A DNA stretch of 64,000 nucleotides from Paramoeba atlantica (GCA_977017575.1 CDRNVI010000032.1:186001-250000); one strand, 5' to 3'. Counted from the first letter of the stretch, positions 6,690 through 60,360 are shown. The notes: generated by a model from the letters alone, not told the origin. Numbers and translations: made by a program.

Positions 6690-7440
6690 CTGTATATACA
6701 ATCCCACCCTTCTACCCCCCCCCCCCCCACCCCCTTTTCTCAGCCACTCTTTTGTTTCTTCGGCGTCTTATTCTTCTTCAGCAGCATCCGGTGCAGCTGC
6801 GGCACCACCCCCCCGCCACGAATCGTCCCCCGCACCACCGCGTCCAGCTCCTCATCCCCGCGCACCGCGAGGAGGATATGCCGCGGGGTGATCCGTTTCG
6901 CCTTTAGATCCATACACGCGTTGCCGGCGAGTTCCAGCACCTCCGCGGTGAGGTACTCCACCAGCGCCGCGGTGTAGATCGCCGCACTGGTCCCACAGCG
7001 CTGGTGACGGAGCAAGTCCTGTTTTAGTCGACGGTGGATGCGGCCGACGGGGAACTGCAGCCCCGCCCGAGCGGAGCGTGACAGCGGGGGCTTGCGGACC
7101 TTCCCGCTGGTCTTGCCGGCGGATTTCCCGGTCTTGGCTTTGCCGCCCTTGCCGCGGGTTTTGGCCGCGACTTTGGCGCCGGTGGTGGTGGTGGTGCCGG
7201 GTAATGCGGGGGGGAGGGTGGGGGAGGAGGGGGGTGAGTTATCGCGGAGGGGAGAGGGGGAGGGTTCGGGGGAGAGGCCGAGGGATTCGGAGGCCATGGG
7301 GGAGGGAGAAGAAGGAGAGAAGGAAAAGAAAGAGGGAGAGGGAGAGAGAAATAAAGAAAATAACTACGGAAGGAGAGTAAATGAGGAATTATAAGAATTG
7401 GTAGGGTGAGGATGGTGAGTACAAGGAGATGGACAGGAAG
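6690..7440. other. GC-rich island with C-to-G skew flip (island 1)
   Basis: On the + strand, C-runs at 6705-6860 give way to G/purine runs at 7195-7440. Confidence 0.75.
6740..7297 (-). CDS. H2AZ: Histone H2A.Z (H2A variant) with long N-terminal tail
   Basis: [62 protein letters not shown] and [12 protein letters not shown] are H2A.Z-type signatures (RIHR, GDEELD). Long Lys/Gly-rich N-tail as in kinetoplastids. Confidence 0.95.
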
Positions 7441-7690
7441 CATCACATCGCGAGAAAATATTCCTAGTTAGAGAGGTGAAACTTAAAAAAACGACACCTG
7501 AACGAAACGGGGCGAACTGACTCAATCCCATTGAAATCAATGGCGATTTCTAATTGTCGGTTTTTCAAGGATGGTTCCCAGCTTTTTCGGGGAGCCATGC
7601 ACCATGGTGGCCCCCCTTTAAGACCACTAGGCGTTACTCTGCCCCAGGACAACGAGACAGTGCCTAGAAGCACACATGACAGAAAAATGA

Positions 7691-8119
7691 TGCCTGGGCG
7701 AAATACTAGACTGCACTTATTTTTCCGTTATCGGAATAGCCACTACCACATTGGACGAAAAAGTGACTGTAGAGTTTAAAAAGAACGACTTGGACGAGGA
7801 ACTAGAAATTGGCTGCGGGTTTTCTTATTCGATTCACAAAGTTCAAGGGGCTGCTGTCCTGGGAAATTTGTGCGTTGATCTTAATCAACGCCCATAAACT
7901 TATCACAGATGTATGCTGACTCACGCTTCCGTTTACGTTGCTCTTTCGAGAGTAAAGTCAGGACAGCAGATATGGTTGTTCCATAACTTTCCAAAGAAAT
8001 GCGAACAAGACTCCTTGAAGGAGTCTTGTAAAACCGAAAAGGCATACTCAGGCCAATCCTTCAGGCTAATAAGATTGGTATGCCTTTTTGGTTTGACTAG
8101 CATTTTGTGTTGTGCATGA
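7691..8119 (+). pseudogene. Pif1/RecD-like (SF1B) helicase C-terminal relic, Helitron-like
   Basis: One frame reads GFSYSIHKVQGAAVLGNLCVDLNQRP*TYHRCMLTHASVYVALSRVKS, corresponding to helicase motifs V (T.HK.QG) and VI (YVALSRV). In-frame TAA at 7895-7897. It lies antisense to the gene cluster. Confidence 0.75.
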
Positions 8120-8290
8120 TTCTTCCGAATAGGGAAGCATTACCTAGGTGTCCACGACAGCGCTGTAAAGTTGTGGGTAAAACGCTTCGAGGAAACCGGA
8201 GATATTGAGCGTGCTACGCCCTTCTCGAAGCGTGCCGTGAAATTATCGACACGGTCAAATATGACAGCTTCGTCACATTGTTTGCTATGA
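8120..8290 (+). pseudogene. IS630/Tc1-like transposase N-terminal helix-turn-helix relic
   Basis: Reads HYLGVHDSAVKLWVKRFEETGDI, which matches the LGVS.STV..WVKRF.ETG HTH pattern of Tc1/IS630 transposases. No DDE domain follows. Confidence 0.55.
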
Positions 8291-9005
8291 CGAGAAAAGT
8301 TCACTTGTCAACTTGGATAGAAAAGCCGTTCTTACATTGGCAGAGCATGACCAGCATAAAGACGAATAAGAAAGACGAATAAACACAGTAACTAGTAGAA
8401 GTAACTAGACTGCGCCAGGCGAGCCGAAGCGAACCGACCCCGAACTTAAACCGAATTTCGCTTCAGTTTAGCCGGTTTCATCCCTCTAAGTTAGGGGAGG
8501 TGACGGTACTTACGCGTTTATGAGGAGACGATATTCTGTTTTAATTAATAGCGAATGTTTCTATTATTGAAATGAATTGGGTGCAAAGTCTTAGGAAGAA
8601 CTGGAGTGTCAATCTCACCATAAAGATCCATGCTTTCAAGAAAAATTCAAGTTTTCAGGAAGACGATCAAACATCACTAAACCAGAGAAAGAGTTGTTAT
8701 CCGTTGTAAAATACATCAGTGAAGACGCGCTACACGGTGGTGCGAAGCGGAGGCCCCTCTTCAAAGGAAAGAAGAGTTTCCGGCCCTAGCGCCAGCCGGA
8801 AACGAACACGCATAAAGTTTTAAGCGTATGCTCGTTTCCGGGAAAGGAAAAGACGAACTAGAGAAAATACACCAAGGTACATAAACTGTATCTTAGTAAA
8901 AAGAACATGGATTCGTGAGATCAAGATTTCCTTCAAATTGGTTGTCACTGAGTCGGTTGAGTCTGAGGGCCTGGTAGATTCGGAGGTCCAGATAATTCCA
9001 GATTA

Positions 9006-9106
9006 CTCCGGACGGTCACTGGCAAGCCAGACCCTTCGCAGACTGATTTGGAAATTCCGAGGCCGACGTCCTCTACCAGTTTCCTCTTGTCCAAGGCGGT
9101 ACCAAC
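9006..9106 (+). repeat. 101-bp dispersed repeat, copy A
   Basis: Manual alignment gives 93/101 identity to the reverse complement of 15804-15904. Confidence 0.9.
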
Positions 9107-9277
9107 GCACTGCTACCAAAACGCTGCGTCGACGAATTGTTCGCCAACACGGCTGCCCAAGAGGTGTAATCCGGGTAAGGGACCTGTTTCCCTGAGGGGA
9201 GGGCCCGGGTCGGTCCTCCGAGTACTGGGCCTAGTCGGCTCTCAGCCCAGCCTCTTAGAGTGAGGCCGCCGGGAATA

Positions 9278-9363
9278 ATGCGATGAGCGGGTTTGAACTC
9301 GCCGTCTGAGCACCATGTGCTTCAAACTTTGAATTCTTGCCACTCCGCCACCTGAATCAGCAT
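9278..9363 (-). other. Degenerate tRNA-like sequence (A/B boxes, long variable-arm hairpin, TCA loop)
   Basis: Minus strand has TGGCGGAGTGG (A-box-like), ATTCAAA loop, AGCAC-ATG-GTGCT hairpin and GCGAG-TTCAAA-CCCGC (T-arm-like, one nt short). The acceptor stem is imperfect. Confidence 0.2.
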
Positions 9364-9404
9364 GGGGTGATAAAATAAAATAAAATTCTGTGCCAGTCAG
9401 TGGT

Positions 9405-9474
9405 CCCAATGCAGGGCCCGAGTGACCCAGCATGGCCCCCAGTGGGCCTTGGTGGCCCCGAGTGGACCCGAAAA
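9405..9474 (+). repeat. GTGGCCCC-type minisatellite, left copy
   Basis: ~10-bp degenerate units. GTGGCCCCGAGTGGACCC at 9452-9469 is identical to 10515-10532. Confidence 0.8.
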
Positions 9475-9479
9475 CCGGC

Positions 9480-10331
9480 GATAAATATACTGTCGCTCCG
9501 ATGACGTTTCGGACCGCTAACCTCATTTCTTCCATTTGTATCTCGTATCTCTACGATTTCAACCTCAGGTTCTGCGGAGATGGAACTGCGAGGCGGAGGT
9601 CTCGCCACGTGGACGAGGTGGAAGTTGTCTGTCTTTCGGTGTTTGATGATGCGACGTTGTAGAAGGTCATCTTTAAGGGAAGTGACTTCACTTCCTTCCA
9701 GTGTTGCCAAAGGTTATCCTTGACATCATCTTGAATTTGGTGAAAAAACTTTGGATCAACTTCAAGGTTTGCATCCCACAAGGTCGATAAAAAGTTTTCC
9801 ACCAAAGCTACTTGATCGTCGCGCAGTCTCTTTTTGAAAAAGAGAAAAATTTTCTCGTTCGCACGCACAACCTCGTACATGCGCCACATGTTTCGAAGAA
9901 ATTCTTGCAGGGAGTTGCGTGGGTGATTAAAGTATGCGCATATTGCTTCCGCAGAACGAGAGATGTAGCGCTTGATGGAAACATCTTTAGCTCGCTTGAT
10001 CAAGATAAGGACCTGTGCCACGTGACCGAACATGAGTTTCGTGCCTCAAAGCATGCGGCCAACGTACTCTGCACACATTGAGAATTTTAGTCTCTTGAAG
10101 CTCACGAGCGTGAAGATGGTCGATGGCACTGGGCAGAAGTCGTTCCGAGTCCTTTGGAGCATTGCATAGAGGACAGTAGTTCGTGCCTATGATTACAGAG
10201 ACCCTTTGACATTGGATGCAAGGATCCTTTGCATCACTTTCAATGGTGCATGCACACAATACACACCGTATAGGTTCCCCCAAAGACACGTGGCGGTCCA
10301 CCTTGCAGCGAGGACAATACATTTTTCCCAT
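9480..10331 (-). pseudogene. Frameshifted orphan gene with N-terminal four-CxxC zinc-ribbon region
   Basis: Three overlapping minus-strand ORFs (9987-10334, 9551-10033, 9357-9710). The first has CPRC/CVLC/CIQC/CPLC. The segment is bracketed by the two GTGGCCCC arrays. Confidence 0.45.
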
Positions 10332-11943: not shown

Positions 11944-13998
11944 TCAGACAGCTAATTCTTGAACAGAAATGCGTGCTACATCTGCCCAATTTTCATCCAA
12001 ATCGGCGGCTCGTTGGTAGTTGAAAATTGCCTCTGATTTCCGACGGAGTTTCTCATGACAACGCGCTAAATTGAGGTGTACAAGCGCGTCCTCTGGACAG
12101 TGAATCCGCAAGAATTCTAAATCAGGAAAAGCCTTTTCATAGTTTGTTCGAAGCATTTCCAAGTGAGCCCGACGATGGCGTACGTTATGGTTCTTAGAAT
12201 CAACTTCCAATATTTGATCATAAATATTTAAAGCTCGAGTGCGTGCTTCTTCATCGTCGAGTTCTTCAAGTGACATTGCTAAGCCTGTCGCTAGAGCAGG
12301 ATTTTCAGGCTTCAAGGCTTGCGCTGCCTCAAAGTAAGTTATAGCTAGAGGAAACTTACCACGTCGTCGTTCCACCTCGCCCAGTCCCGCAATCGCCGCA
12401 TACAAACGTGGGTCGAAATCTAACGCCCGTTGAAAGCGCTCTGATGCTGACCTCCACGCCTCCTGACGTAAAAGCTCGAACCCAAGTAACACATGTCCGT
12501 ACGCAAAATCCTCCTGCACGCCAATCGCAAGCGTGAACAGACGCTCTGCCTCCTCTACCTCTCCACAAAGGCTGTGGTAGTTACCGGCAACACACATAGC
12601 GATCACGGAAAACGGTTCCTGGGCCACACAACGTTGTGCCAGGGTACGAAGTTCAGCCACGGCTCGTGTGTGCCACAGCGCTATACTGTAGTACAGAAGC
12701 GAGGGGTCCATTTTCCACGCATAGTGCCGGGTGTATGTCGACCACGACCGCACCGCCTCCGTGTATAGCCCTCTCTCGTAGTAGGTCTGCGCCAGCATCG
12801 GGAGATACCACTCCGCGTGTTTGTGTGCGGTAGCGAAGGACCCGTTGGTGAGACAGGACAGCCCACTGGTGTTACTCCCACGGAGACACTGGCGTGCCTC
12901 TACGTAGGGCTTTAGCACATCCACGACGGAGTGAAGTCTCTGGGCGTAGGTTTTTCGTAAAGGTCGCGGGTGAGTGCTCTCGGGGCTTATGTCCCCCATG
13001 TGGGTTGTGTGTAGAAAAGTACTCCGACGTCCGTAACTTGACGGTCGCCCGTCAAGGACTAAGTTGGAGAACTGTTGCAATGGGGTGCGACGTCCGAGCA
13101 TGTTCGGGCGACGCTCTGAGGGTGGGGTGTGAAGATTTCGGGGTCGAGGCGACTTCATGAGAGGGGGAGGTGTACGCCTCGCGGTAGAGTTCCTCACAGG
13201 AGCCGGAGTGGAATATTCAAGAGAGGAATCCAAGGCTGAGCCCTGGGTGGTTCTAGTGGAGCTACGCATAGTAAGTCCACCCAGCGTACTTCGCCGATGT
13301 TTTCCTATAAGAGAACGTGTGAATACGGGAGGGGCGGCAGAAGGGTCTGACGTTTTGCACTCGGCTGAGGAAGGGACAGGTTCATTACTTTCCTTTGCCA
13401 TGTTCGGTTTTTCCGTCTTACAGTGTGTGTCGTTTTCAGATGCGGCATCAAAGTGTTCTGCTGTAAATTTATGAAATACATCATCCGTATCGGCGCCTCC
13501 ACACAAAGCTTCATCGAGCGCTGCTATTTGGGTGGGATCTATAGAGTAACACTGTGAGTACGACTTTTTTGCCTCTGCGTGCTTGCCTAACCGTTTCTTG
13601 CACTCTGAAGTCCAATAAAGTATTCCACAGAAAAGGTCTTCTCGAATTTCGTGTGCTATGTCTTCCGTAGTTGACTCCAACGCATATCGTAATTCAGTTA
13701 AAGTTCGTTCAGCTTGCTTGAAATTCCCCACCTGCACCTGTGCTACTCCAAATAAGTACATTAAGCGAGCATAGGCAACGATATCATTCAAGGAAAACGG
13801 ATAGAGCGATTCTATAAAACGACAAACGGTTCGAACTTCGCCAGCGAGGTAGTAAGTCTGCGCTAAGATATGGGCTGTGCTAAGATCCCGATTTATTTCA
13901 TAGAGGCGATGAGCTAAAAAGATTGCATTGCGGTGAAGCAGAAGCCGGTGTGAACGATCAATAGCAGCGTGGAGACTCCTTATGACCTCGTTGTCCAT
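11944..13998 (-). CDS. CDC27: Anaphase-promoting complex subunit CDC27/APC3 (TPR)
   Basis: N-terminal NAIFLAHRL...AHILAQTYY dimerisation TPRs and a disordered S/T-P-rich middle. C-terminal TPRs include CVAGNYHSL and FAYGHVLLGFE..FQRALDFDPRLYAAIAGLG. Confidence 0.85.
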   Translation of the reverse strand: MDNEVIRSLHAAIDRSHRLLLHRNAIFLAHRLYEINRDLSTAHILAQTYYLAGEVRTVCRFIESLYPFSLNDIVAYARLMYLFGVAQVQVGNFKQAERTLTELRYALESTTEDIAHEIREDLFCGILYWTSECKKRLGKHAEAKKSYSQCYSIDPTQIAALDEALCGGADTDDVFHKFTAEHFDAASENDTHCKTEKPNMAKESNEPVPSSAECKTSDPSAAPPVFTRSLIGKHRRSTLGGLTMRSSTRTTQGSALDSSLEYSTPAPVRNSTARRTPPPLMKSPRPRNLHTPPSERRPNMLGRRTPLQQFSNLVLDGRPSSYGRRSTFLHTTHMGDISPESTHPRPLRKTYAQRLHSVVDVLKPYVEARQCLRGSNTSGLSCLTNGSFATAHKHAEWYLPMLAQTYYERGLYTEAVRSWSTYTRHYAWKMDPSLLYYSIALWHTRAVAELRTLAQRCVAQEPFSVIAMCVAGNYHSLCGEVEEAERLFTLAIGVQEDFAYGHVLLGFELLRQEAWRSASERFQRALDFDPRLYAAIAGLGEVERRRGKFPLAITYFEAAQALKPENPALATGLAMSLEELDDEEARTRALNIYDQILEVDSKNHNVRHRRAHLEMLRTNYEKAFPDLEFLRIHCPEDALVHLNLARCHEKLRRKSEAIFNYQRAADLDENWADVARISVQELAV

Positions 13999-20661: not shown

Positions 20662-21924
20662 TTACGGTGCGGGAGACTCTTCAAACGACGGAGCACTGCG
20701 TTTAGTTGTCTCACGCTTTTTATCCACACCTTTTCCGTCTTTCTCCGCCTTTTGTTTTTCTCGTTCCCTTGCCCGACGTTTGTTCTCGCGTCGGGTGTGA
20801 CGGGCTTTCTCCTCCAGGAGCGCCACCTCTGCTGGGGTCTTGGAAAGGTAACTATGCCAAATCACTTCGCCCCCACACACCCCGCTCTCCACCTTGAGCA
20901 GTCTCAAACTGAGCCGAGGACCCAGTTCTACCAGCTTCACCCGGAGCGAACCCTTCTGCCGACGAAACGTCAGCGCGGGCGGAAGTTCAACATTCTCCCC
21001 TTCCCCCTCCGTATCCGAAGCTCCCCCAGGCCCCGCACTCAACGCCTCGGACAAACTCTCCGCATACGAAAAACTCTCCGGGACATTCCCCCCCGAGAGC
21101 TTCGCAATACTCCGATTCAACCCCGTGGGACGGGACTGTACCGTATAATGCCGCATCTCCAACACCACAGGCGTCTTTTCCTTCCCTCTCCCCTCCTCCC
21201 CCTCCTCCTTCCCCCCCTCCACACGCTCCACCTCCCCGGGCTTCATTAAATGAAACAACACCACACGGTGAATGTGACTCAAATCACTACGACGCTCCAC
21301 CATGGGCTCCGGAACCATCGACTGCAACATCTCCAACGTCAGCGCAAGCTCCGGGCGAAGTCGCGAACCTGAAACCCACTTCTTTTTTTCTTCTCTACGG
21401 GTAGGGACGGAACCCTCTTCATCCTCCTCACAAACTACCCCCCCCTCGCGCCCAAACCCGTTACACATCACCAGCGGGGGGTACTGGTACTGCCGCTGCC
21501 CCCCCGCGCACCCCCGGGTCCGTGCCCCCCTCCCCACCACCACCCCGCTCCCCGGGGTGTAGGACTGGACCCGGAAGCACAGCGTGGGGCCGTGGGGGAG
21601 GCGCGAGAGCGCGAGCGTGGGCCCGCGCGGGGGGCTGGCGAACTTAAACAGGTGGGTGAGCCGTAGCGCGGGGGCGAGCGCGAGGAGGTCGCGCAGGGGG
21701 TGGCGGGAGTGGGGGGGGAGGTGGGAGAGGGTGTGGGGGGCGAGGGCCTTGCGGCAGTCCCGGATGAGGCGGTCCATGGTGGGGTCCGCGGGGCCGTGGT
21801 GGTAGAGAAGGGAGCAGGGGAGGGGGGCAGGGGAGGGGGTGGTGGGGGAGGGGGAGGAGGGGGGTGGTGGGGGTTGGGTGAGATGGGTGCGACGCTTCTT
21901 GCGACGTTTTCCTTTGTAGGGCAT
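20662..21924 (-). CDS. PPAN: Brix-domain ribosome biogenesis protein Peter pan/Ssf1
   Basis: M..K.KRRKKRRTH start, LTHLFKF, LSRLPHGPTLCFRVQSYT, PPLVMCNGF, LEMRHY, VKLVELGPRLSLRLLKVESGVCGGEVIWH. An upstream ATG also exists at 22053. Confidence 0.92.
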   Translation of the reverse strand: MPYKGKRRKKRRTHLTQPPPPPSSPSPTTPSPAPLPCSLLYHHGPADPTMDRLIRDCRKALAPHTLSHLPPHSRHPLRDLLALAPALRLTHLFKFASPPRGPTLALSRLPHGPTLCFRVQSYTPGSGVVVGRGARTRGCAGGQRQYQYPPLVMCNGFGREGGVVCEEDEEGSVPTRREEKKKWVSGSRLRPELALTLEMLQSMVPEPMVERRSDLSHIHRVVLFHLMKPGEVERVEGGKEEGEEGRGKEKTPVVLEMRHYTVQSRPTGLNRSIAKLSGGNVPESFSYAESLSEALSAGPGGASDTEGEGENVELPPALTFRRQKGSLRVKLVELGPRLSLRLLKVESGVCGGEVIWHSYLSKTPAEVALLEEKARHTRRENKRRAREREKQKAEKDGKGVDKKRETTKRSAPSFEESPAP

Positions 21925-22000
21925 GGGGTGGGGGGAATAGGGAGGAGGATGGGTAAAGGGAGATGGAGGGAACGTGGAAGATTGGGGTAGGGGTTGGGAG
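20860..22000. other. GC-rich island with C-to-G skew flip (island 2)
   Basis: The + strand is C-rich over 20860-21553 and abruptly G-rich over 21554-22000. Confidence 0.85.
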
Positions 22001-22323
22001 GTAAAGATGTCTTTTTTGAAGTAAAAAATGTAAGAGATTGTGAAAACTGTCATGTCCTATAAGATATACACGAGATACAAGATGTATTGATGTTCCCGTG
22101 TATATTGGCTCTGCGAAAGCAATATTAAAAGGCATAAATTGTAGGTAAAAAGTCTTAGAAAAATTCTTAAAGCTGATCCCCTCCTTATCCAAATGCTGCG
22201 CTAAATAATAAGTAGACTTTACAAAGAAAGAACAAAATTGCATTTTTCAGCAGACTAAGGCCCAATGTCGTCTTATCCATTCAACATTCAGTTGCGCATT
22301 CTATATGATCCATTCGTCACTGC

Positions 22324-25465: not shown

Positions 25466-25684
25466 TGACGAACAATTTGTGTATCTAAAAAACTTTTCGA
25501 AAAAAACGACACTTTCTGATTTAAGTGATATTTAATAGTTACTGCAGCTCGAATCCCGAGACCTACGTTTTTAAGCACAACTATTTGCCCCCAAATCGAG
25601 GATTATCCTTGATCCACCCTACCCCGGACACCATAAAGAAGGGAGAGGCAGAGGTTGTAAAACCCCCGCAATTTTTCTTTTTTA

Positions 25685-25783
25685 GTCGCTTCGTTAAACG
25701 CGGTGGCAGTTTTCAACGCGAAGCTCGCAGCATGAGTCATTTCTATGTATGTTGAAAACAACCACCGCGTTTAACGGAGCGAC
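25685..25783. repeat. 99-bp hairpin element with 33-bp arms
   Basis: GTCGCTTCGTTAAACGCGGTGGCAGTTTTCAAC ... GTTGAAAACAACCACCGCGTTTAACGGAGCGAC (30/33 complementary), between a T-run and an A-run. Confidence 0.85.
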
Positions 25784-25816
25784 AAAAAAAATATGCATCA
25801 TAGTGTACTGATACTA

Positions 25817-26342
25817 CCGGGCGTTACTTAATTACGGAATTTCTTAATTACGGTTAACGGTTAAAATTTTCTTCGATTTTAACCTTAAATCGGTTAACCG
25901 TAATTAGGGAGTAACCGTAATTAAGAAATTCCGTAAATAGGGAAAATGGGTTATGCAAAGACCGCAACGAATTTCAACATCAATGAAACGATAACAATTA
26001 ATCATCAACTAGATTCGAATCAACTAGATTCGAAAGTGCGTTGTAGCTTTCTTCTAGTGGTATCCGCATCATCGTTGCGTTCCCCGCAGCCAAGTCCAAG
26101 CTATAATGTTTCCAAGCCACTCGTAATGCAATTATCTGATGGTGGCGCATTCCACATTGTACGAGGAATGCCAGTCGCTCTATTCCTCGCCCAGGCGACT
26201 TTCTGCTTCCCGATATTCCAGTCACAGGGCGCATAAAAATATTTTGCTCGGAAAATAAAAATGTCAGTTTAAATCTTAAATAGATTAACCGTAATTAGGT
26301 AAAAACTGTAATTAAGGGCAACCGTAATTAAGTAACGCCCGG
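25817..26342. mobile_element. 526-bp TA-flanked MITE with perfect 21-bp TIRs
   Basis: TA|CCGGGCGTTACTTAATTACGG ... CCGTAATTAAGTAACGCCCGG|TA, with many subterminal TAATTACGG/CCGTAATTA repeats. Confidence 0.9.
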
Positions 26343-26549
26343 TAACCGTTACTAACATTATTTTGTATGATTCTAACGAAATACACTGTATACTTTGCGA
26401 GAGCTTTTCAGGAAGCAAAATGCTGCATTTTTCATGAACAAAAGTAATTTCGAAACAACTGCGTCAAACAGTGTGATCATCACGAATTGGAGTAAGAATA
26501 ATGAAAACGAAAACATAATAGAATATAGTACATGTAAACCGAGTTCCGG

Positions 26550-26583
26550 GTTATTGTGCCCCCCCTCCCCCCGGCACAATAAC
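26550..26583. repeat. 11-bp-arm inverted repeat around a C-tract
   Basis: GTTATTGTGCC-CCCCCTCCCCCC-GGCACAATAAC. The C5-T-C5-like core resembles the MITE ends at about 3670 and 33620. Confidence 0.5.
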
Positions 26584-26665
26584 TACACCCCCTTTCATTG
26601 AGAATGATAATTGAAAAAAATTCACCTCAGGCTGTGACAATTACTCAAACATTATCAAAAAAAAT

Positions 26666-27156: not shown

Positions 27157-27215
27157 ATATATCATAGAAAAAAGATCACGAAAAGCATAAATGTTCGTGC
27201 CACATAATACATTTT

Positions 27216-33593: not shown

Positions 33594-33619
33594 TAGAGAT
33601 CCAAAAAAGTTAACGTATA

Positions 33620-33910: not shown

Positions 33911-34075
33911 TAAGGCTTCCCTATAATGTTTTAGTACCAAGGAGGTGAATGAGTTTATACACTTCCCTGGCTTCAGAATTTTGAAATGCACACGTTACCA
34001 CTACTTTTAGTAGACTTTTTCGAAGTTTTTTCTCCAGCAAAACTATCAACTTTCGGCATAACTATTTTTTGATGA

Positions 34076-35002: not shown

Positions 35003-36691
35003 TCATAGACGAAGCACAAGAGACCTAAGACGATTCAAGGCTCCGGACATTTCAAAGCGCCGCACACGACTTGAAAACCCCAATGGAAACCAGCTTTTGC
35101 CTGTTTGGGGCTCAACTTCTGGCCTAGTCTCGAATTTTTCTCCAATGGATTTCAAGCAAGAATCCGATGGCTTTTCCTCCGCAAGCCTAAGCAAGGCTTG
35201 TGCGATAAAATTCGCTTGTGCGGGTTCAACAAGTTGTTCCAGGTGAGAAATGTCAACTTCCTCCGTCCCACACTGAATGTAGCCTCGGGTTGCTTTGACC
35301 CTTGGGCTGTCTTTATTCAGACACCGAAAACTGCGCCCAACTTCAACCCATCGATCCCGAGGAAGCACCAGCGGAGTACTGGGTTTAGGAGGGAGGCTGC
35401 AAAGTCCGGGGGACTCACGTAATATCTCTGTGACCTGATCAGTAAGGTCATTGCATCTGTACCCCTCCAACCCCAACACCGTGTCTGCGACGTGCAGGTA
35501 CTGCCCCGACCCCCCAACAACCAGAATAATGGATATGCCATGGGTACGAAATAGTTCCCGCACACGAGACACAAACGGCACAATTGGCTCCGCCTCCACG
35601 ACCCTCGCTATCAACGCATCCCGAACCATAAAATTCGTCGCCGAGGTATCCTCATCCACCAAAAGCGTCTGCGCCCCACATTCCAACGCCTCCGCAATAT
35701 TCGCCGCCTGACTCGTCGACCCACTCGCATCCGGTGAACAAAACACCGCCGTATTCGCCCCCGACGGCACCTCCTTAATAAACGACCCAATATCCACGCT
35801 CGTCACCACACGTCGATCCTCCGCTCGAATCTTACACGCCGTCGGGTCCGTCACCACAAACTCTCTCCCATCCCCGGGCAAATGATTATACACCCCCACC
35901 TGCAACGCCCTCAACAGGGTCGATTTCCCATGAAACCCACCCCCCGTAATCACAACCACCCCACGCGGAATCCCCATCCCCGTCACCACCCTCCCCGACG
36001 GCAGCCGCACCGTTTTCTCCAACCCCTTCGGGGACGCGAACGGGAGGGCCCCGGGCAGCGCCGTGTCCACCGTCCCCGAGGCCCTGGGGAGCACCGCCCC
36101 ATTGGCCACGAACCCACACAGCCCCCTCCCCGGGAGGGCGTCCCGCAGCGCCTGCTGGTCGCCCACGTGGGTGAGGTAGTCCCCCATGTGGGCGGGGGGG
36201 ACCCGGCTGAGGTGAGTGAGAACCCGCAGGGGGGCGTGCAGTAAGGCCCGGGCACACCCCGGGGCGTCGACACGACGGTGGGGACCGGGGAGCGCGACCC
36301 GGCAGCGGAGCTCCACGCCCCCGGCGGGGGTGAGAAGCACCGCGGAGCGCTGGAGGATGTGCTGGGAGGGGGTGAGGAGCTCAAGGGGGGGGAGGGGGCT
36401 GGGGAGCGCCCCGTGGGCACGGCGAAGGAGGTAGTCCGCGGCGGCGATGTGGGAGATGTGGGTGGGGTCGGAGAGGTTAAGGGGGAGGGAGGTGAGGAAG
36501 GGGAGGGAGCAGCGTAGGGTGAGTTGGCTGCCCGGGGCGAAGGGGTCGGGTTGGACTCGGGTGAGTTCGCCCTGGAAGAGGGAGTTCCCCCCCAGGCCGT
36601 ATTTGATGCCTTGCAGCTTGCGCAGGGTGCTGTAGGGGGCTTCGTGCATTCTCTGCAGCCGTTTATCCATCGGTTCTGCGTTTCCGATCAT
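35003..36691 (-). CDS. ABC-ATPase-family protein (PF09818/COG3044), MRB1590-like
   Basis: VQPDPFAPGS, GMGIPRGVVVITGGGFHGKSTLL (Walker A), VYNHLPGDGRE, IRAEDRR, DASGSTSQAANI, LLVDEDTSATNFMVRD. Confidence 0.9.
   Translation of the reverse strand: MIGNAEPMDKRLQRMHEAPYSTLRKLQGIKYGLGGNSLFQGELTRVQPDPFAPGSQLTLRCSLPFLTSLPLNLSDPTHISHIAAADYLLRRAHGALPSPLPPLELLTPSQHILQRSAVLLTPAGGVELRCRVALPGPHRRVDAPGCARALLHAPLRVLTHLSRVPPAHMGDYLTHVGDQQALRDALPGRGLCGFVANGAVLPRASGTVDTALPGALPFASPKGLEKTVRLPSGRVVTGMGIPRGVVVITGGGFHGKSTLLRALQVGVYNHLPGDGREFVVTDPTACKIRAEDRRVVTSVDIGSFIKEVPSGANTAVFCSPDASGSTSQAANIAEALECGAQTLLVDEDTSATNFMVRDALIARVVEAEPIVPFVSRVRELFRTHGISIILVVGGSGQYLHVADTVLGLEGYRCNDLTDQVTEILRESPGLCSLPPKPSTPLVLPRDRWVEVGRSFRCLNKDSPRVKATRGYIQCGTEEVDISHLEQLVEPAQANFIAQALLRLAEEKPSDSCLKSIGEKFETRPEVEPQTGKSWFPLGFSSRVRRFEMSGALNRLRSLVLRL
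35440..36650. other. GC-rich island with C-to-G skew flip (island 3)
   Basis: The + strand is C-rich over 35440-36160 and G-rich over 36190-36650. Confidence 0.85.
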
Positions 36692-36961
36692 GAGGAGTGG
36701 TGAGAAAGTACACGCTACATAAAAATTGAAAGTCTAGGCATATTTAATAGCGTTGGGAGAATTGTGTGGGTTGCAAGGTATGTAAAAGTTACCAATACGT
36801 AAAAACAGATTTTTGCAATTTAAAGTTATAATTTGAAACCTTATAATTTCATACTTTAAACTTGATTTTTATTCTCCTTCTATCTGTACTTCCTTACTTC
36901 AATACACCTCACCACCACTCCTTACCCTTTCTCTTCTTATGCAGCAACCCAGCAATTTTAC

Positions 36962-37933
36962 TTAGTCGAACAATCCCAGGCCCATATCCTCATCCTCTTC
37001 CTCGGCTTCCTCTTCCTGGACTGCGGCGGCCTCTGTCTTACTGGCGGCATCACCACTGGCGGCCCCAGCGGCGGGGGCCAGCGATTTGCCACTGCGAATG
37101 GCTTCCACGATTTCCTCCCCGCTGAATTCGGGAAAAGAGTACCCAGTGCCAAGCGAGATGGCCAACAAGTTCTTGAATGCACGGGTGGCGACATGAGGCA
37201 TGGAGGACACGGTGGGGATGCCAGTGGCAAGAGCTAGGGAGGTGACATTGCGCAGCGCAGTCTGGATGTTTTCCCGGAAGAAGTCGTCGTTGAGCTCAAG
37301 GATGTCCGAGCCAAACACAGTGCCGTTGTCGAACACGAACTTTATCTCTAGCCCGTAGAAGAAGGGTTTGATCTTTAGCTTTTGCAACAGCACGGCCGTG
37401 GAGTTGTCTACCTTGTCCCCGGTCGTAAGAACCTTTTTCTCGGTCAGAATCTCCACTGCCCCCTTCACGATCTTGGTGTTGATCGAGAGCGCCTGGAAGA
37501 AGGTGGTCATGCCGGGCTCCAGACCGGTGTTCCCGGCGGGAATCACCACGTCCAGAGGGGCGATCGCCCCGACGCGAGCAGGAGCCTGAATGCGGTTCAA
37601 ACGGATCACTTCCTGAATGACATCAAACTCCTCGTTGGTGAAGATGATACCGAGATTTCCCACCAGAGAACCAGCCTCGATGACCTTTTCCAGGAGTTCC
37701 TTGTCTTGCTGCGTGGCGTCTTCCGAGGACGCACGCATGCGAATGGCTTTGCGCATCAGAGTGTTCTTCCCCATAAGGATCTCCCCTTTTCCTCGAAGCC
37801 CCTTGCGAATGTTGTGCATTTGTTGGGACTGCACGTTGTCGACGTTACAGAAGATAAGGCGGCGGTGGGTCGCGACAAGATCGGCCATACGATCGAGGTA
37901 GTTTGCTTTCTTTTCGGAAAAGACGCGCACCAT
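36962..37933 (-). CDS. RPLP0: 60S acidic ribosomal protein P0 (uL10)
   Basis: DNVQSQQMHNIRKGLRG, MGKNTLMRKAI, GNLGIIFT, APARVGAIAP, NTGLEP..TTFFQALSINTKI, C-terminal EEEDEDMGLGLFD. Confidence 0.98.
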   Translation of the reverse strand: MVRVFSEKKANYLDRMADLVATHRRLIFCNVDNVQSQQMHNIRKGLRGKGEILMGKNTLMRKAIRMRASSEDATQQDKELLEKVIEAGSLVGNLGIIFTNEEFDVIQEVIRLNRIQAPARVGAIAPLDVVIPAGNTGLEPGMTTFFQALSINTKIVKGAVEILTEKKVLTTGDKVDNSTAVLLQKLKIKPFFYGLEIKFVFDNGTVFGSDILELNDDFFRENIQTALRNVTSLALATGIPTVSSMPHVATRAFKNLLAISLGTGYSFPEFSGEEIVEAIRSGKSLAPAAGAASGDAASKTEAAAVQEEEAEEEDEDMGLGLFD

Positions 37934-41121: not shown

Positions 41122-41399
41122 TGAAAGCGTCACGAAAAAGTACTATGACATTGCCTGCAAGCGACCAAAATATAAAAAGAAAAGTGCTATCTGTATAGGT
41201 AAAATCATTTGATTCATGTACCCCATCTTTTCACACCACTTCAACATCATGTTAACATTTAGCCATGATTTTTTTGCAGTAAAAATATTTGCTTCAGCAT
41301 TTTTACAGTAACTTATCCCTAGATCCTTAACTCTTTTCTACCAACCTCTTCCTACTCTTCGCTTATTTCCTTTCCCCTTTCGAAAGAGTAACTACTCAC

Positions 41400-41966
41400 T
41401 TACTCTTCCTCCTCCTCCTTTCTGCCACGACCCTTTGCAAGTTTCACCCGGCGGCACCGTGCGATCTTGCCACTCACCAGCGGACTCTGTGCCGCCAACG
41501 CAATGTGCTTCTCACTCGTCACCCGTACCATGAACGAGGGCACCGTCACAATCTGTTTCCCCACGGCAATATGTCGCTGGCGTACCATCACTCGGGCATG
41601 GTGAATCGACTTTGCGAGTCCGAGCTTAAACACAATCGTCTGCAGCCGGCGCTCAAGGATATCGGTGACGCCCAGGGAGAGCACGTAGTCGAGCTTGTGT
41701 TTGTCCGCAGAGAGCAGACCTGTTTCCTGACATCGTCGTAACAGGGCTGCGCCCTCGAGTTGTCGTCGCGGGTGGTCCTCGGGGAGGGTCAACAGAATAC
41801 GTGCGGTACGACGAAGCTTGGAAAGAAAAAGGTTGACACGCCAGATTTCTTTCTTACAACGCAGGCCGTACTCGCCGCAGAGTTTGAGTTCACGGTCGAG
41901 ACGTTCACGTTCGAACGGACGGCGGGGGTTCTTGCGGACCCGGTTGCAGTTGCGGTAGTTGCGCAT
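41400..41966 (-). CDS. RPS9: 40S ribosomal protein S9 (uS4)
   Basis: [65 protein letters not shown]. Confidence 0.98.
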
Positions 41967-42588
41967 GGGTGGGAATACGGTTTAAAAATGGGGGAAAATA
42001 TAGTTTTAAGGAAAATAAAAATGTAGGAAGGGTTGAAATTCGATATTAATGGATGTGAAAATACATGATATGCGACGATTGGTCGAATAGAATTAAAGAA
42101 TTCTAAGACTCACGATTCTAGTCTCATGAATACGTGCAAATTTTATTAGTTAGTATTTACTAATCAAATTGGAGATGAATCAGTTGCAAGACTTACAACT
42201 TGTTGCACAAAGTGTTACAATTTGTTAATAAATGTATTTAATAAGAAGTGTAATTAAGTTTAAATACTACAAAAGGTGCACCTTTTCGGGCGTACTACGT
42301 TGTATGATCAACCGACGCATTTAAGCTTCTCAACTAAACAGGACAATAGCTTCTTACCACATGTATTTTTCTGTCGACGGGTTTCACTACATGATAAGAG
42401 ATTACATCATAAGGGTTGTATATCAATAGGTGTTTTCATAGCGAAGCAAGAAATAATTTCTTGAAAAATATAGAACTTGTTGCACTACGGCGTATGATAT
42501 TGTGTTGATACTACGAATATTTCTTGTATTCAAAAAAATATATTGCATACTGTACACGAACCAACCCGGTGTCTTCAAGATTACTTCT

Positions 42589-57361: not shown

Positions 57362-59146
57362 TCAGTTCAATTCTACACCAAATTCATTCGCAAGAGCTGT
57401 AATATCATTTCTAGTGGTCAGCTCAATCAAGTCACTGCGATCCATCTGGTGTAAAGTGAGACGCATCATGTTCCATATCTCGCGTGTACACTCTGCTCTG
57501 CGAAACAGTGTGTACTGGTGCAGCATGGGCCCATCTGCTTTATCTTCTAAAGAGGTTTCACTGGTCGCTTCATTTTGTAAATGTACTGCCCTAAGAAATG
57601 TACGTACAGCCTCCGCGTACTCCCCAAGGTTGGAGAGCGAGATGCCGCGGTTGTAGTGCACCCGAACATTACCCGGTTTAATGTCTAATGCACGGTCGTA
57701 TGCCTGAAGCGCTTCTTGCGATCGGTTCCCATTAGCTAGTGTGGCGCCCAGTTGATTCCACAAAATGGCATCGTCGGAGCGTAATGCTAAGGCGCTTTGA
57801 AAATCCGCCGCGGCGAGATCGTATTCATGGGAAAGATTGTGAACAATACCAAGCGCCAGGTGGAGGTCAGGGTCCGTGTTGCTATAGACGGCTGCTTGCT
57901 CAAGAGAGCTACTTAGGGCCTGGTGCTCGTCAGCGTTTACCTCGAGGTACTCAGATACCATTTCGTCCCCCTCGGAGGTTATTGAATCAACAGTATACGA
58001 CGCATATTCTGGATGATACCGCAGCCATTGACGTAAAATCCCAAGTGCTGCACCGGCATGTCCCTCATTCGTCAAGGAAGCGCTAAGAGAAAGATAATTG
58101 GGAAGACACAATGGATCTAATTCTACAGCCTTACGTAGTGCAATTACAGCGAGTGGGTCTTTCTCGCTCTCTTGTAGGGCATGGCCCAGTTGCTGCCATG
58201 CCTCTACGTGTTGACTATCTTTTTGGCAGGCTGCCTCAAAGGCTAGGGCAGCGGAGGCTACCGCCCCGGCGTGCAACAGATCGTTCCCTTCCTCAAAAGG
58301 AAAGTCATGAAAGCGATACGGATTGTCAGGATGAAATGGGTACTCTTCGGAAGTTTTATCCAGTCCTAACTCATTCTTGGAAAAGTTCTCATATTCTTGT
58401 TCCCAGGAAAGGTCTTCGTTGTCCGAATTTTGAAGGAAGTCTTTAGCCCAGGATTCTTCCACAGCTTGCTCCTCAAAAGTCGAGAATCCTTCGTCGTCTT
58501 GAAATTGGTTTGCCCATGACGTATTTTCCAAATCATCTGGTACCGCACTCTCATTTATTACGTCATGTTCGGTTGTTTCAGAGAAAGAGTTGTCTTGATT
58601 AACTGACTCCGAACGAGCCTCGTCAAGTTCTTCATCCAGTATCGTGGGTTCTGAATTAATATTTTGTTCACCCATGCCTTCGATAGAAAATTCTTGCACA
58701 GGTTCATTTACGATAGGCCCCGAAGCCTCTCCTACAAACCTTTCAAGCCACGCAGAGCTGTCTCCTGGGTCATCAAATCCAATATGAGCATCTGAACCAG
58801 GAACATACTCTGCATATGATTCATCCCTCATGCGCGATGGAGGTTCACCTGATTTACGCTCCTGATTCCATACGGAATCAAAAGAAACATCGAAATGTTC
58901 ATCATTTCCCGTAAAAGGGGTGATTAACGTTTCTGCGTATTCTATTGGAGGCGTCTCATCGTTGTAGTTCGAGGGAAAAGCATTAAAGTCAGCGTATAGA
59001 GGGGGCGCTTCATTCACATGAGATTCCTCCGGTGTCTCACCCCAAGTCTCAAGCGGAACCATAGGGCCTTGAAACATAGCCCCTGCTGCATCTGCAAATG
59101 TGTTCCCTCCGCAACTGGGGTCCAGTAGATCGCGAAAAAAACTCAT
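57362..59146 (-). CDS. PEX5: Peroxisomal PTS1 receptor PEX5
   Basis: N-terminal M..RDLL...CGG, four WxxxF/Y motifs (WLERF, WANQF, WAKDF, WEQEY), YPF..DNPY, and C-terminal TPRs with LWNQLGATLANGNRS.EA..AY.RAL..KP..VR..YN.GIS. Confidence 0.95.
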   Translation of the reverse strand: MSFFRDLLDPSCGGNTFADAAGAMFQGPMVPLETWGETPEESHVNEAPPLYADFNAFPSNYNDETPPIEYAETLITPFTGNDEHFDVSFDSVWNQERKSGEPPSRMRDESYAEYVPGSDAHIGFDDPGDSSAWLERFVGEASGPIVNEPVQEFSIEGMGEQNINSEPTILDEELDEARSESVNQDNSFSETTEHDVINESAVPDDLENTSWANQFQDDEGFSTFEEQAVEESWAKDFLQNSDNEDLSWEQEYENFSKNELGLDKTSEEYPFHPDNPYRFHDFPFEEGNDLLHAGAVASAALAFEAACQKDSQHVEAWQQLGHALQESEKDPLAVIALRKAVELDPLCLPNYLSLSASLTNEGHAGAALGILRQWLRYHPEYASYTVDSITSEGDEMVSEYLEVNADEHQALSSSLEQAAVYSNTDPDLHLALGIVHNLSHEYDLAAADFQSALALRSDDAILWNQLGATLANGNRSQEALQAYDRALDIKPGNVRVHYNRGISLSNLGEYAEAVRTFLRAVHLQNEATSETSLEDKADGPMLHQYTLFRRAECTREIWNMMRLTLHQMDRSDLIELTTRNDITALANEFGVELN

Positions 59147-59369
59147 TCTTAAGTTAAGGGGATTAGTTTGAATACCGTTCACTACCACAATTCTTTTACC
59201 ATACAAACAAACTGCAACAATTTAAATAAATGCGCCTAAAAGCTTGAATCTTTTAATCAAATAGAACAAAAGTCCCAATCTATAGTAGACTAGTACGAAA
59301 TGTCTCCCTACTTATTCCAAAGAAAAGTTGCGTAAGCCCATTCCTTAAGATTTTTCTTATACAAGAATC

Positions 59370-60360
59370 AAACTCCAAACAGACCACCTCCTACACCTGT
59401 ATGTGTTACCTCCACAAGAATACACCTTAACGCTTCACATAAAACTCTACTTTCCCCCCACCCCTCTATTCCCCCCTCACTCCGCAAACGTTTTAAAATC
59501 CCGCAACCACCGCTCATACTCCCCTTGCTCAATATACTCACACTGCTCCTTAATAAACACCGCAAACTTATCCGTCACCCCTTTCCCCTCCAAGTAACTA
59601 TGCAACACGGTAATCACGGCCTCATCCAGGTGCGCCAACGTGGGGCCCTGGTAGTGACTCTCCAGTTCCCGGCACGTCTGGGCGGATAAGAAATCCGTAA
59701 TCCCCCGGGCGCTGGGGTAGACCACAATGTTGTCCACCACGAGCTCGTTCTCCACGGAGAGCATGGAGAACTCCACGGTGCGCTGGTGCCGCAGCGCGCG
59801 CAGCACGAACGGGTACTGCTCCACGGGCTCCTCCGTGTTCCCCGCGTCCGGGTTCCCCTTCGGGAGGGCGCAGAAGACCTCGAGCGTGGCCTCCGCGGGG
59901 CTGGCCGCGGGGTGGGACATGGTGAAGAAGCTCTTGCCGGGGTGGAGCTGGAGGGTCCAGCCATCGGGGAGGGGAGGTGGGGGGCTGCGGTCGATGGCCT
60001 GCTCGTCCGTGAGCTCCTTGTCGAGGACTTTGCAGAGGTCGGTGGGGGGGGAGGGGGAGGGGGGAGGGGGGGAGGAGGGGGTGCAGTAGGGTCGGGTGAG
60101 GGGGGAGGGGAGGGCAGTGCGCGTGAGGGGGGTGAGGGGTGTAAGGGGGTAGAGGAGGCGGGTGGGGAATTTGGGGGAACGTTGGAGGAGGGAACGCATG
60201 GAGGAAGGGGAGGAGAAAGAGTGGTAAGGGAAAAGGAAAAGTATGGGGTGAAAACAATTGTTTCCCCCCTCTAATAACTAATTATAAATCCTTTCCCCTA
60301 TATATTATTTATGAATAATTATAGGGTGAAGGATGGAATATAATGGAGGTGGAGTGTTGC
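59370..60360. other. GC-rich island with C-to-G skew flip (island 4)
   Basis: The + strand is C-rich over 59370-59720 and G-rich over 59880-60360. Confidence 0.85.
59477..60199 (-). CDS. Mitochondrial acidic matrix protein MAM33/p32 family (p22-like)
   Basis: Presequence-like N-terminus, LCKVLDKEL, YQGPTLAHLDE......SYLEGKGVTDKFAVFI...EYIEQGEYERWL. Confidence 0.9.
   Translation of the reverse strand: MRSLLQRSPKFPTRLLYPLTPLTPLTRTALPSPLTRPYCTPSSPPPPSPSPPTDLCKVLDKELTDEQAIDRSPPPPLPDGWTLQLHPGKSFFTMSHPAASPAEATLEVFCALPKGNPDAGNTEEPVEQYPFVLRALRHQRTVEFSMLSVENELVVDNIVVYPSARGITDFLSAQTCRELESHYQGPTLAHLDEAVITVLHSYLEGKGVTDKFAVFIKEQCEYIEQGEYERWLRDFKTFAE

What the first reader, a model, noticed from the sequence alone, without database searches (positions are those of the whole stretch)
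6690..60360. Recurrent ~1-kb GC islands with a strand-symmetric C-to-G skew flip centred inside genes: candidate origin, promoter or recombination-hotspot signal
Seen: most of the window is AT-rich or neutral, but four islands (centres about 7.0, 21.55, 36.18 and 59.8 kb) are very GC-rich. Each reads C-runs first, then G-runs, on the + strand, so the pattern is identical on the - strand. The bias extends into non-coding flanks on both sides (e.g. 6705-6740 and 7300-7440; 59370-59476 and 60200-60360), so it is not only codon usage. All genes here are co-directional, so ordinary transcription-coupled skew should be one-sided and should not flip. The first three centres are about 14.5 kb apart; the fourth gap is about 24 kb, with weaker flips around RPS9 and eIF3d. 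Established: a symmetric C-to-G flip is the signature of bidirectional replication origins and of bidirectional R-loop-forming promoters, and local GC gain with flipped mutation asymmetry occurs at meiotic break hotspots. Inference: these islands may mark a genome-wide class of intragenic initiation or break sites within a polycistronic unit.
Basis: partly seen in the sequence, partly recalled or inferred. Interest (0 to 1): 0.85.

Follow-up and report, generated by a model that had tools for sequence, protein, structure and literature searches.

The report
Mirror-skewed GC islands inside kinetoplastid genes
Four ordinary genes in this kinetoplastid gene array each carry a 1-kb patch whose freely changeable DNA letters have become almost all C and then almost all G; this is the footprint of an undescribed strand-specific DNA process, possibly internal start sites for transcription or replication.

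Summary
C-to-G flips lie at 7002, 21554, 36167 and 59850, with a weak one at 41656. Their scores exceed all 200 block shuffles. At 4-fold sites GC is 82-89% against a 38% background: C 0.78 in one arm, G 0.66 in the other. Non-coding flanks share the skew; non-island genes do not.

New here:
- The drive is not a symmetric AT-to-GC push. In the C-arm, C/T two-fold codons are 94% C, but A/G two-fold codons stay at background (44% vs 40%). The G-arm is the mirror image (76% G; C 27% vs 38%). Everything drifts to G on the strand running 5'->3' away from the junction.
- This argues against plain biased gene conversion, codon optimisation and mRNA folding.
- The polarity matches the GT-rich coding strands of T. 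brucei transcription start regions. It is opposite to the G4 layout of T. brucei origins.
- Junctions sit 223-524 nt after the ATG in 5 of 5 cases.
- A relative's orthologue has no island.

My best guess, at low confidence, is internal divergent R-loop or initiation zones. An origin, or a process anchored to gene 5' ends, remains open.

The scan has already found this phenomenon many times elsewhere in this genome. I found no published description.

The parts
6500..7002 (-). Island 1, G-arm in gene sense (C-rich on +). It covers the 3' half of an H2A.Z-like histone gene (CDS 6740-7297) plus a G/T-rich 3' flank with a 14-nt G run just after the stop codon.
7003..7500 (-). Island 1, C-arm in gene sense (G-rich on +). 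It covers the 5' half of the H2A.Z-like CDS plus a C/T-rich upstream tract (7298-7440).
   Evidence: upstream 100 nt: skew -0.90
20700..21554 (-). Island 2, G-arm. It covers most of the Brix/PPAN CDS (stop at 20662). The switch at 21555 is abrupt, reading 'cccc|gggg'.
21555..22010 (-). Island 2, C-arm. It covers the first 74 codons of PPAN (ATG about 21777, where the Pfam Brix domain starts in the ORF) plus about 230 nt of non-coding C-rich sequence. That non-coding part is 58% C and 6% G in sense.
35450..36167 (-). Island 3, G-arm, inside the ABC-ATPase/MRB1590 gene (CDS 35003-36691). The arm ends about 450 nt before the stop codon.
36168..36790 (-). Island 3, C-arm. It runs from the polypyrimidine tract and spliced-leader acceptor (mRNA 5' end at 36734) through the first about 175 codons.
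59250..59850 (-). Island 4, G-arm. It covers the 3' half of the MAM33/p22 gene (CDS 59477-60199) plus a G/T-rich 3' flank.
59851..60250 (-). Island 4, C-arm. It covers the Pro-rich 5' half of MAM33 plus about 50 nt of C/T tract. A milder C>G skew continues to about 60500.
41250..42060 (-). Weak island over RPS9 (CDS 41400-41966), centred at 41656. GC3 is 62-68% and skew3 runs from -0.5 to +0.5. The flanks are skewed (-0.81 upstream, +0.68 downstream).
   Evidence: score 118, within the shuffle range
12300..13500 (-). Weak mid-gene island in the 684-aa gene 11944-13998. GC3 reaches 74% and skew3 runs from -0.3 to +0.6 around codon 400.
36962..37933 (-). Control: RPLP0. GC3 is 64-78% with no flip. 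Its mRNA is mapped from 37967 (spliced-leader junction) to about 36874.

Best explanation
Shown. Each island is a DNA-level compositional domain laid over a normal, trans-spliced gene. It consists of two abutting tracts of about 0.4-0.85 kb. In each tract, the strand that runs 5'->3' away from the junction has been driven to G. On that strand A, C and T are replaced by G wherever the protein allows, T is tolerated, and C and A are purged.

Inferred, step 1. This spectrum and polarity fit recurrent single-strandedness of the outward strand on both sides of a fixed point. Lesions on that strand (abasic or deaminated bases) would be bypassed by C insertion. G would then be the absorbing state. 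G-richness, by favouring R-loops and G4 structures, would reinforce the exposure.

Inferred, step 2. The outward strand is the non-template strand of divergent transcription. I therefore favour internal, CpG-island-like divergent initiation or R-loop zones inside the polycistronic unit. These would be akin to the GT-rich coding-strand promoters of T. brucei transcription start regions.
For: - Flips exceed all shuffles.
- The pooled 4-fold profile is a plateau of about 75-97% GC from -450 to +550. It switches from C 0.8 to G 0.7-0.84 within about 200 nt. In PPAN the switch is abrupt.
- Two-fold-codon test. In the C-arm, Y2 codons are 94% C (background 38%, p 1.5e-15) but R2 codons are 44% G (background 40%, p 0.72). 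In the G-arm, R2 codons are 76% G (p 1.8e-16) but Y2 codons are 27% C (p 0.03).
- In the G-arm, TTG is used more than CTG and AGT more than AGC, so C is avoided there.
- D/(D+E) is 0.59 in the C-arm and 0.26 in the G-arm (p 0.002).
- Non-coding flanks share the skew.
- G4 motifs: 7 of 9 on the + strand lie in right arms, and 4 of 5 on the - strand lie in left arms. They sit on the outward strands.
- GT-rich sequence on the coding strand of T. brucei start regions drives directional Pol II transcription and H2A.Z deposition (PMC5579346). This is the same polarity.
- Human CpG-island promoters show a reverse skew upstream and a co-oriented skew downstream, with R-loops (PMC3787257).
- A 'C-rule' for bypass of abasic sites has been reported in eukaryotes (PMC4167244).
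- A relative's orthologue and its 14-kb contig have no island, so the trait is lineage-specific.
Against: - There is no direct evidence of initiation, antisense RNA or R-loops. The runs available were contigs only.
- The junctions lie 223-524 nt inside coding sequence, not in spacers.
- The ABC-ATPase mRNA is an ordinary spliced-leader mRNA that spans the island.
- The island density is far above the start-region density I recall for trypanosomatids.
- AT skew does not flip. The upstream outward strand is therefore GA-rich rather than GT-rich.
- Non-coding island sequence is less extreme than 4-fold sites (C 0.58 vs 0.8).
- The lesion-bypass chemistry is my inference and is not tested.
Confidence: 0.35

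Rival explanations
1. Fixed bidirectional replication origins. The outward strand is the lagging-strand template, so its single-strand exposure near the start site gives the same drive to G.
For: - A C-to-G upward jump is the classic origin polarity; this is established knowledge.
- The outward strand would be the exposed one.
- The 4-fold and non-coding sites flip.
Against: [quoted passage not shown] Their G4s are on the + strand upstream and on the - strand downstream, on the leading-strand template. That is the opposite polarity to these islands (PMC13179062).
- The skew is confined to about +/-0.5 kb instead of extending along replicons.
- Centres are inside coding sequence and tied to gene 5' ends.
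- There is no A-to-T flip.
Confidence: 0.2
2. A one-directional process anchored to gene 5' ends, either co-transcriptional or a 5' chromatin domain. It would start at the polypyrimidine tract and splice acceptor and run about 1.2 kb downstream, first favouring C and then G on the sense strand. The 'mirror symmetry' would then be only a mathematical identity.
For: - Junctions lie 223-524 nt after the ATG in 5 of 5 cases. A random position does so 21% of the time, giving p 0.002 for 4 of 4.
- The C-arm of island 3 starts at the mapped spliced-leader acceptor and polypyrimidine tract, 36734-36790.
- Short genes are covered whole, with shorter arms.
Against: - I know of no mechanism that would reverse sign in mid-gene under transcription in one direction.
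- Weak islands sit in the middle of long genes.
- The anchoring could instead be a filter. A G-arm placed over a downstream polypyrimidine tract would destroy trans-splicing, so only compatible placements would survive; this is my inference.
- These genes have no promoters of their own, as far as is known for kinetoplastids.
Confidence: 0.2
3. Stable DNA double-strand-break or recombination hotspots, with GC-biased gene conversion plus a strand-asymmetric repair bias that flips at the break.
For: - The islands have the 1-kb scale of conversion tracts and a strong GC gain, and they are lineage-specific.
- The haplotypes of three runs form a mosaic in the ABC gene.
Against: - A symmetric AT-to-GC bias predicts more C at C/T two-fold sites in the G-arm and more G at A/G two-fold sites in the C-arm. 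Neither is seen.
- Resection leaves single-stranded the strand that runs towards the break. Here that strand is the C-rich one, so single-strand damage would give the opposite polarity; this is my inference.
- Between-strain differences are not concentrated in the island core: 10 in 1150 nt, against 14 in 550 nt in the non-island 3' part of the gene.
Confidence: 0.12
4. Selection on the product: codon optimisation, amino-acid composition, or 5'-3' pairing of the mRNA.
For: - GC3-rich codons do mark the probably highly expressed RPLP0 and RPS9.
- The island proteins are enriched in Pro, Leu and Ala, then in Gly, Val and Glu.
Against: - Non-coding flanks carry the skew.
- RPLP0 has high GC3 without a flip.
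- The island covers only the first 1.25 kb of the ABC gene, whose RNA-like depth is as low as its neighbours'.
- The two-fold-codon asymmetry is not a codon-optimality pattern.
- The MFE of the H2A.Z mRNA is -299.9. Synonymous permutations within blocks give -304.6 +/- 6.8.
- The ABC protein is no more diverged in the island than in its tail.
Confidence: 0.05
5. Assembly artefact or chimera with foreign (host) DNA.
For: None found.
Against: - Conserved kinetoplastid proteins read in frame across the island borders.
- An independent DNA contig of 9.5 kb, differing at 0.8% of sites, spans island 3. So do RNA-like contigs carrying a spliced-leader junction.
Confidence: 0.01

Closest known systems
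GT-rich coding-strand promoters and skew at Pol II transcription start regions of Trypanosoma brucei and Leishmania (Wedel et al. 2017, PMC5579346)
   Same: They are G(T)-rich on the strand that would be the coding strand of outward transcription, with long G runs. At a divergent site this produces a C-to-G flip on the + strand. The lineage is kinetoplastid.
   Different: The known start regions are broad, lie between genes and are rare. These islands are 1 kb long and lie inside coding sequence. About 1 gene in 8-10 carries one here, and 4-fold sites are driven to about 80% of a single base. Initiation has not been shown.
GC-skewed, R-loop-forming CpG-island promoters of vertebrates (Ginno et al. 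2013, PMC3787257; Polak & Arndt 2008/2009, as cited there)
   Same: They are about 1 kb long and GC-rich, with a negative skew upstream and a positive skew downstream of a point. The strand asymmetry is confined to the first 1-2 kb.
   Different: The skew there is modest and centred on the transcription start site, and the concept rests on CpG depletion elsewhere in the genome. In this genome CpG o/e is about 1.0, and the junctions lie 0.2-0.5 kb inside the ORF.
Replication-origin skew switches (bacteria, human N-domains) and T. brucei SNS-seq origins (PMC13179062)
   Same: The sign of the GC-skew jump matches that of the classic skew switches.
   Different: Classic skews extend over whole replicons and are weak. 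[quoted passage not shown]
Strand asymmetry of vertebrate mitochondrial DNA (from my own knowledge)
   Same: It is the only natural case I know of with a |GC skew| of about 0.8-0.9 at 4-fold sites. It is attributed to time spent single-stranded, and the exposed strand becomes G/T-rich.
   Different: It affects a whole genome, is driven by transitions and involves no GC gain. The islands here also need transversions to G.

Membership tests
Bidirectional replication origin (skew-switch type) | GC skew changes sign from negative to positive at the origin. | tested here: met
Bidirectional replication origin (skew-switch type) | The skew persists along each replichore away from the origin. | tested here: not met
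   The skew returns to about 0 within 0.5-0.85 kb.
Bidirectional replication origin (skew-switch type) | Nascent-strand or marker-frequency evidence of initiation. | not testable with these tools
   Only assembled contigs were available.
T. brucei-type SNS-seq origin | [quoted passage not shown] | tested here: not met
   The centres are in coding sequence. The G4 motifs are on the - strand upstream and the + strand downstream. There is no A-to-T flip.
Kinetoplastid Pol II transcription start region (GT-rich promoter) | G/T-rich runs on the coding strand of the transcript that starts there. | tested here: inconclusive
   The sense G-arm and its 3' flank are G/T-rich and C-poor. The opposite arm is G-rich but GA-rich in its flank.
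Kinetoplastid Pol II transcription start region (GT-rich promoter) | Primary-transcript 5' ends and H2A.Z or acetylated histones at the site. | not testable with these tools
   No such data exist for this organism.
CpG-island promoter with R-loop-forming GC skew | GC-rich, about 1 kb, CpG o/e above 0.6, against a CpG-depleted genome. | tested here: not met
   The islands have GC 0.59-0.63 and CpG o/e 0.68-0.86. However, the genome background o/e is 1.04, so there is no depletion to contrast with.
CpG-island promoter with R-loop-forming GC skew | The skew switch coincides with the transcription start site. | not testable with these tools
   The only mapped mRNA 5' end is a spliced-leader junction at the island's upstream edge.
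Recombination hotspot with GC-biased gene conversion | A strand-symmetric advantage of GC over AT at all silent sites. | tested here: not met
   In the G-arm, C/T two-fold sites are 27% C (background 38%). In the C-arm, A/G two-fold sites are 44% G (background 40%).
Recombination hotspot with GC-biased gene conversion | Raised diversity or exchange at the hotspot. | tested here: inconclusive
   One island and contigs only. There are 0.9% differences in the core against 2.5% in the adjacent non-island part.

The most novel reading that the evidence does not exclude
The islands are a new class of self-reinforcing genomic element. A fixed intragenic point would expose the outward strand on both sides, through divergent initiation or R-loop formation. 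Lesion bypass with C insertion would then ratchet that strand to G, rewriting codons and some amino acids. If they are functional, they would be dispersed internal promoters or origins. A kinetoplastid's 'polycistronic' array would then in fact be punctuated every 5-15 kb.
Probability: 0.3. Interest if true: 0.9.

Novelty: new variant of a known kind. Interest (0 to 1): 0.78.

Why it matters
Kinetoplastids are the textbook case of genes without individual promoters, and what defines their origins is still debated. A sequence footprint this strong reaches up to 100% GC at third positions, with a skew of +/-0.9 that flips in mid-gene. It would allow the sites of a strand-specific DNA transaction to be read directly from a genome.

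It also shows how far a local mutational drive can rewrite essential genes (a histone variant, PPAN, MRB1590, p22) without breaking them. The two-fold-codon result narrows the chemistry to 'everything becomes G on one strand', which is a testable mutational signature.

Tried and rejected
- mRNA 5'-3' pairing. The MFE of the H2A.Z mRNA is no lower than that of synonymous permutations within blocks or across the whole CDS. An earlier, larger run timed out.
- Amino-acid composition as the sole cause. Rejected by the 4-fold and non-coding sites.
- Expression-linked codon bias. RPLP0 has high GC3 and no flip, and the ABC gene is not abundant in the RNA-like contigs.
- AT-skew flip. None is consistent across the islands.
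- Periodicity. The two equal gaps of about 14.6 kb do not survive once the weaker islands are included.
- Pol III or ncRNA landmarks. There are no tRNA genes and no Rfam hits in the 64 kb.
- Faster protein divergence inside the island. Not seen for the ABC-ATPase.
- Exact-protein look-up of the ABC-ATPase. Not on record.
- Locus L002 is bacterial and irrelevant.
- Literature. Searches on Prokinetoplastina or Perkinsela with skew found no description.


Full report
**Setting.** The window has 44% GC. All 39 ORFs of 100 aa or more are on the - strand. Pfam names ordinary eukaryotic genes, including an H2A-family histone, Brix/PPAN, ABC-ATPase/MRB1590, MAM33/p22, RPLP0, eIF3d, RPS9 and NPL4. The best relative of the ABC-ATPase is a transcript of the free-living prokinetoplastid clone PhF-6, at 48% identity; trypanosomatid MRB1590 proteins follow. 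RNA-like contigs end at 37967 in a loose tail. Its reverse complement, AGATACAGTTTCTGTACCTTGTT, carries the conserved core of the kinetoplastid spliced leader; I recognise that core from my own knowledge. The genes are therefore trans-spliced. This is a kinetoplastid polycistronic array.

**The observation.** A flip scan with 400-nt arms finds C-to-G flips at 7002, 21554, 36167 and 59850, with scores of 194-285. The largest value in 200 shuffles of 100-nt blocks was 168. RPS9 (41656, score 118) is weak. No G-to-C flip exists other than the islands' right edges. The 200-nt skew runs from about -0.5/-0.7 to +0.7/+0.8, and GC reaches 0.78.

In gene sense, third codon positions reach 82-100% GC against a 30-45% background. 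Skew3 goes from -0.9 to +0.9. I pooled the four islands on their junctions. At 4-fold sites GC stays at about 75-97% from -450 to +550. C is about 0.8 and then G is 0.7-0.84, with the switch taking about 200 nt. Values return to background by +700. In PPAN the switch is abrupt, reading 'cccc|gggg' at 21555.

Non-coding flanks share the skew. Upstream G is 0.04-0.11 and downstream C is 0.07-0.12. The 230 nt upstream of the PPAN ATG are 58% C and 6% G. Flanks of non-island genes are not skewed.

The islands are not chimeras. The reading frames continue across their borders. A 9.5-kb DNA contig from another run, differing at 36 sites in 4.5 kb, spans island 3.

Any C-then-G sequence reads the same on the other strand, so the symmetry alone does not show a two-sided process. 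The two gaps of about 14.6 kb are real numbers. However, weaker islands lie in between, at about 12.9 kb in mid-gene, at 41.66 kb and at about 2 kb.

**What kind of force.** The decisive test was to separate the codon classes, counting only sites more than 100 nt from the junction.
- C-arm: 4-fold sites are C 0.78, G 0.12, A 0.04 and T 0.06. C/T two-fold codons are 94% C (background 38%, p 1.5e-15). A/G two-fold codons are 44% G (background 40%, p 0.72).
- G-arm: 4-fold sites are G 0.66, C 0.16, T 0.12 and A 0.05. A/G two-fold codons are 76% G (p 1.8e-16). C/T two-fold codons are 27% C, slightly below background (p 0.03).
- In the G-arm, Leu prefers TTG over CTG and Ser prefers AGT over AGC. 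C is therefore avoided there, not merely left unfavoured.

A strand-symmetric advantage of GC over AT would raise both two-fold classes in both arms. That covers GC-biased conversion and selection for GC3 codon optimality. Neither class pattern fits. The data instead fit a drive to a single base on a single strand, and it includes transversions. In both arms, the strand that runs 5'->3' away from the junction goes to G, with T tolerated and A and C lost.

The drive also reaches the proteins. D/(D+E) is 0.59 in C-arms and 0.26 in G-arms (p 0.002). Pro makes up 15% of C-arm residues, while Gly and Val each make up 10% of G-arm residues. Even so, the ABC-ATPase is no more diverged from its orthologues inside the island than in its tail. 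Purifying selection therefore holds.

**Other readings tested.**
- mRNA folding. The H2A.Z mRNA folds at -299.9 kcal/mol. Synonymous permutations within each block give -304.6 +/- 6.8, and permutations across the whole CDS give -298.5 +/- 5.7. There is no sign of selected pairing.
- Expression. RPLP0 has RNA-like contig depth of 700, against 7-16 for its neighbours. It has GC3 of 64-78% and no flip. The ABC gene, which carries one of the strongest islands, has ordinary depth.
- Diversity. In island 3 the other strain differs at 10 sites in the 1150-nt core. It differs at 14 sites in the 550-nt non-island 3' part of the same gene, at none in the spacer and at 1 in RPLP0. The core is not a diversity peak here.
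- Lineage. The orthologue in a compact, co-directional kinetoplastid contig (Logan, 43% identity) has GC3 of 44-66% and a skew near 0. None of the 11 genes on those 14 kb has an island.

**Relation to genes.** The junctions lie 295, 223, 524, 310 and 349 nt downstream of the ATG. A random position falls in the 200-550 nt band 21% of the time (p 0.002 for the four strong islands; this test is post hoc). For island 3 the C-arm starts at the polypyrimidine tract and the mapped spliced-leader acceptor (36734). Short genes are covered whole.

This can be read in two ways. It could reflect a true 5' anchoring. It could also be a filter: a G-arm laid over a downstream polypyrimidine tract would ruin trans-splicing, so only placements compatible with splicing would persist. 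The weak mid-gene islands in the two long genes fit the filter idea.

**Polarity against known systems.** G4-type motifs sit on the outward strand. Seven of 9 on the + strand are in right arms, and 4 of 5 on the - strand are in left arms. [quoted passage not shown] G4s there are on the + strand upstream and on the - strand downstream, that is, on leading-strand templates (PMC13179062). That is the opposite layout.

T. brucei transcription start regions are enriched in G/T 10-mers on the coding strand. Synthetic GT-rich elements drive directional Pol II transcription and H2A.Z deposition (PMC5579346). A divergent pair of such elements would give exactly a C-to-G flip. Human CpG-island promoters show co-oriented skew downstream and 'reverse' skew upstream, linked to R-loops (PMC3787257). 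This genome has no CpG depletion (o/e 1.04), so the CpG-island concept applies only by analogy.

**Mechanism (inference).** 'Everything becomes G on one strand' is what would be expected under two conditions. First, that strand is repeatedly single-stranded and acquires abasic or deaminated sites. Second, those sites are copied by insertion of C, the 'C-rule' reported in eukaryotes (PMC4167244). G is then the only base whose loss is repaired without change.

Which strand is exposed depends on the process.
- In divergent transcription the outward strand is exposed, because it is the displaced non-template strand in R-loops.
- At a bidirectional origin the outward strand is also exposed, because it is the lagging-strand template.
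- After resection of a double-strand break, the strand that runs towards the break is exposed, which would give the wrong polarity.

The confinement to about +/-0.5 kb fits R-loop-sized tracts better than replichores. I therefore rank the readings as follows:
- internal divergent initiation or R-loop zones: 0.35
- origin: 0.2
- a one-directional process anchored to gene 5' ends: 0.2
- break hotspot with biased conversion: 0.12
- selection on the product: 0.05
- artefact: 0.01

None of the functional steps is shown. Only assembled contigs could be laid on the window.

**Novelty.** Full-text searches found no description of such islands. They covered kinetoplastid skew and origins, Prokinetoplastina nuclear genomes, and Perkinsela with skew. 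Earlier agents of this scan found the same phenomenon many times in other windows of this genome and reached mixed conclusions. Four results were absent from those notes when I searched them: the two-fold-codon result, the D/E shift, the fold test, and the polarity comparison with mapped T. brucei origins and promoters.

Noticed in passing
window 33618-33912: A MITE-like element of 295 nt with 22-nt terminal inverted repeats (TACCCCCCCTCCCAGTAATAGA / TCTATTACTGGGGAGGGGTGTA, 86% complementary). Word depth in the DNA run is 3000-4800 against 83 for flanking DNA. Many joints and loose ends occur there. This indicates a dispersed repeat of tens of copies.
   Followed up: partly
window 37967 and 36734: Spliced-leader junctions were read from RNA-like contigs. 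The RPLP0 mRNA runs from 37967 to about 36874 (5'UTR 34 nt, 3'UTR 88 nt). The ABC-ATPase mRNA 5' end is at 36734 (5'UTR 43 nt). The spliced-leader 3' end reads ...AGATACAGTTTCTGTACCTTGTT.
   Followed up: partly
window 35003-35554: The non-island 3' part of the ABC-ATPase gene differs from another strain at 14 sites in 550 nt (2.5%). Elsewhere on the same 4.5-kb contig the figure is 0-0.9%. A third run is a mosaic of the two haplotypes. This suggests heterozygosity or recombination.
   Followed up: no
window 36962-37933 and 41400-41966: RPLP0 and RPS9 have GC3 of 62-78% with a preference for C-ending codons. Their 5' flanks are C-rich and their 3' flanks G-rich, yet they lack a strong flip. This may be expression-linked codon bias, or islands that are weak or young.
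   Followed up: partly
window 7002, 21554, 36167: Two successive gaps between strong islands are nearly equal (14,552 and 14,613 nt). The genes between them are unrelated. This is a post hoc observation and probably a coincidence, but it remains unexplained.
   Followed up: partly
window 7450-9550, 25470-27210, 33030-35000: Three stretches of about 2 kb lack any convincing ORF on the coding strand. They lie in an otherwise compact array and may be decayed mobile elements. No tRNA gene or Rfam family was found anywhere in the 64 kb.
   Followed up: partly
window 6715-6728 and 59454-59476: In the two short island genes, long G runs in gene sense begin directly after the stop codon (14 G after H2A.Z; GGGGGG...GGGGTGGGGGG after MAM33). 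C/T runs end directly at their ATGs.
   Followed up: no
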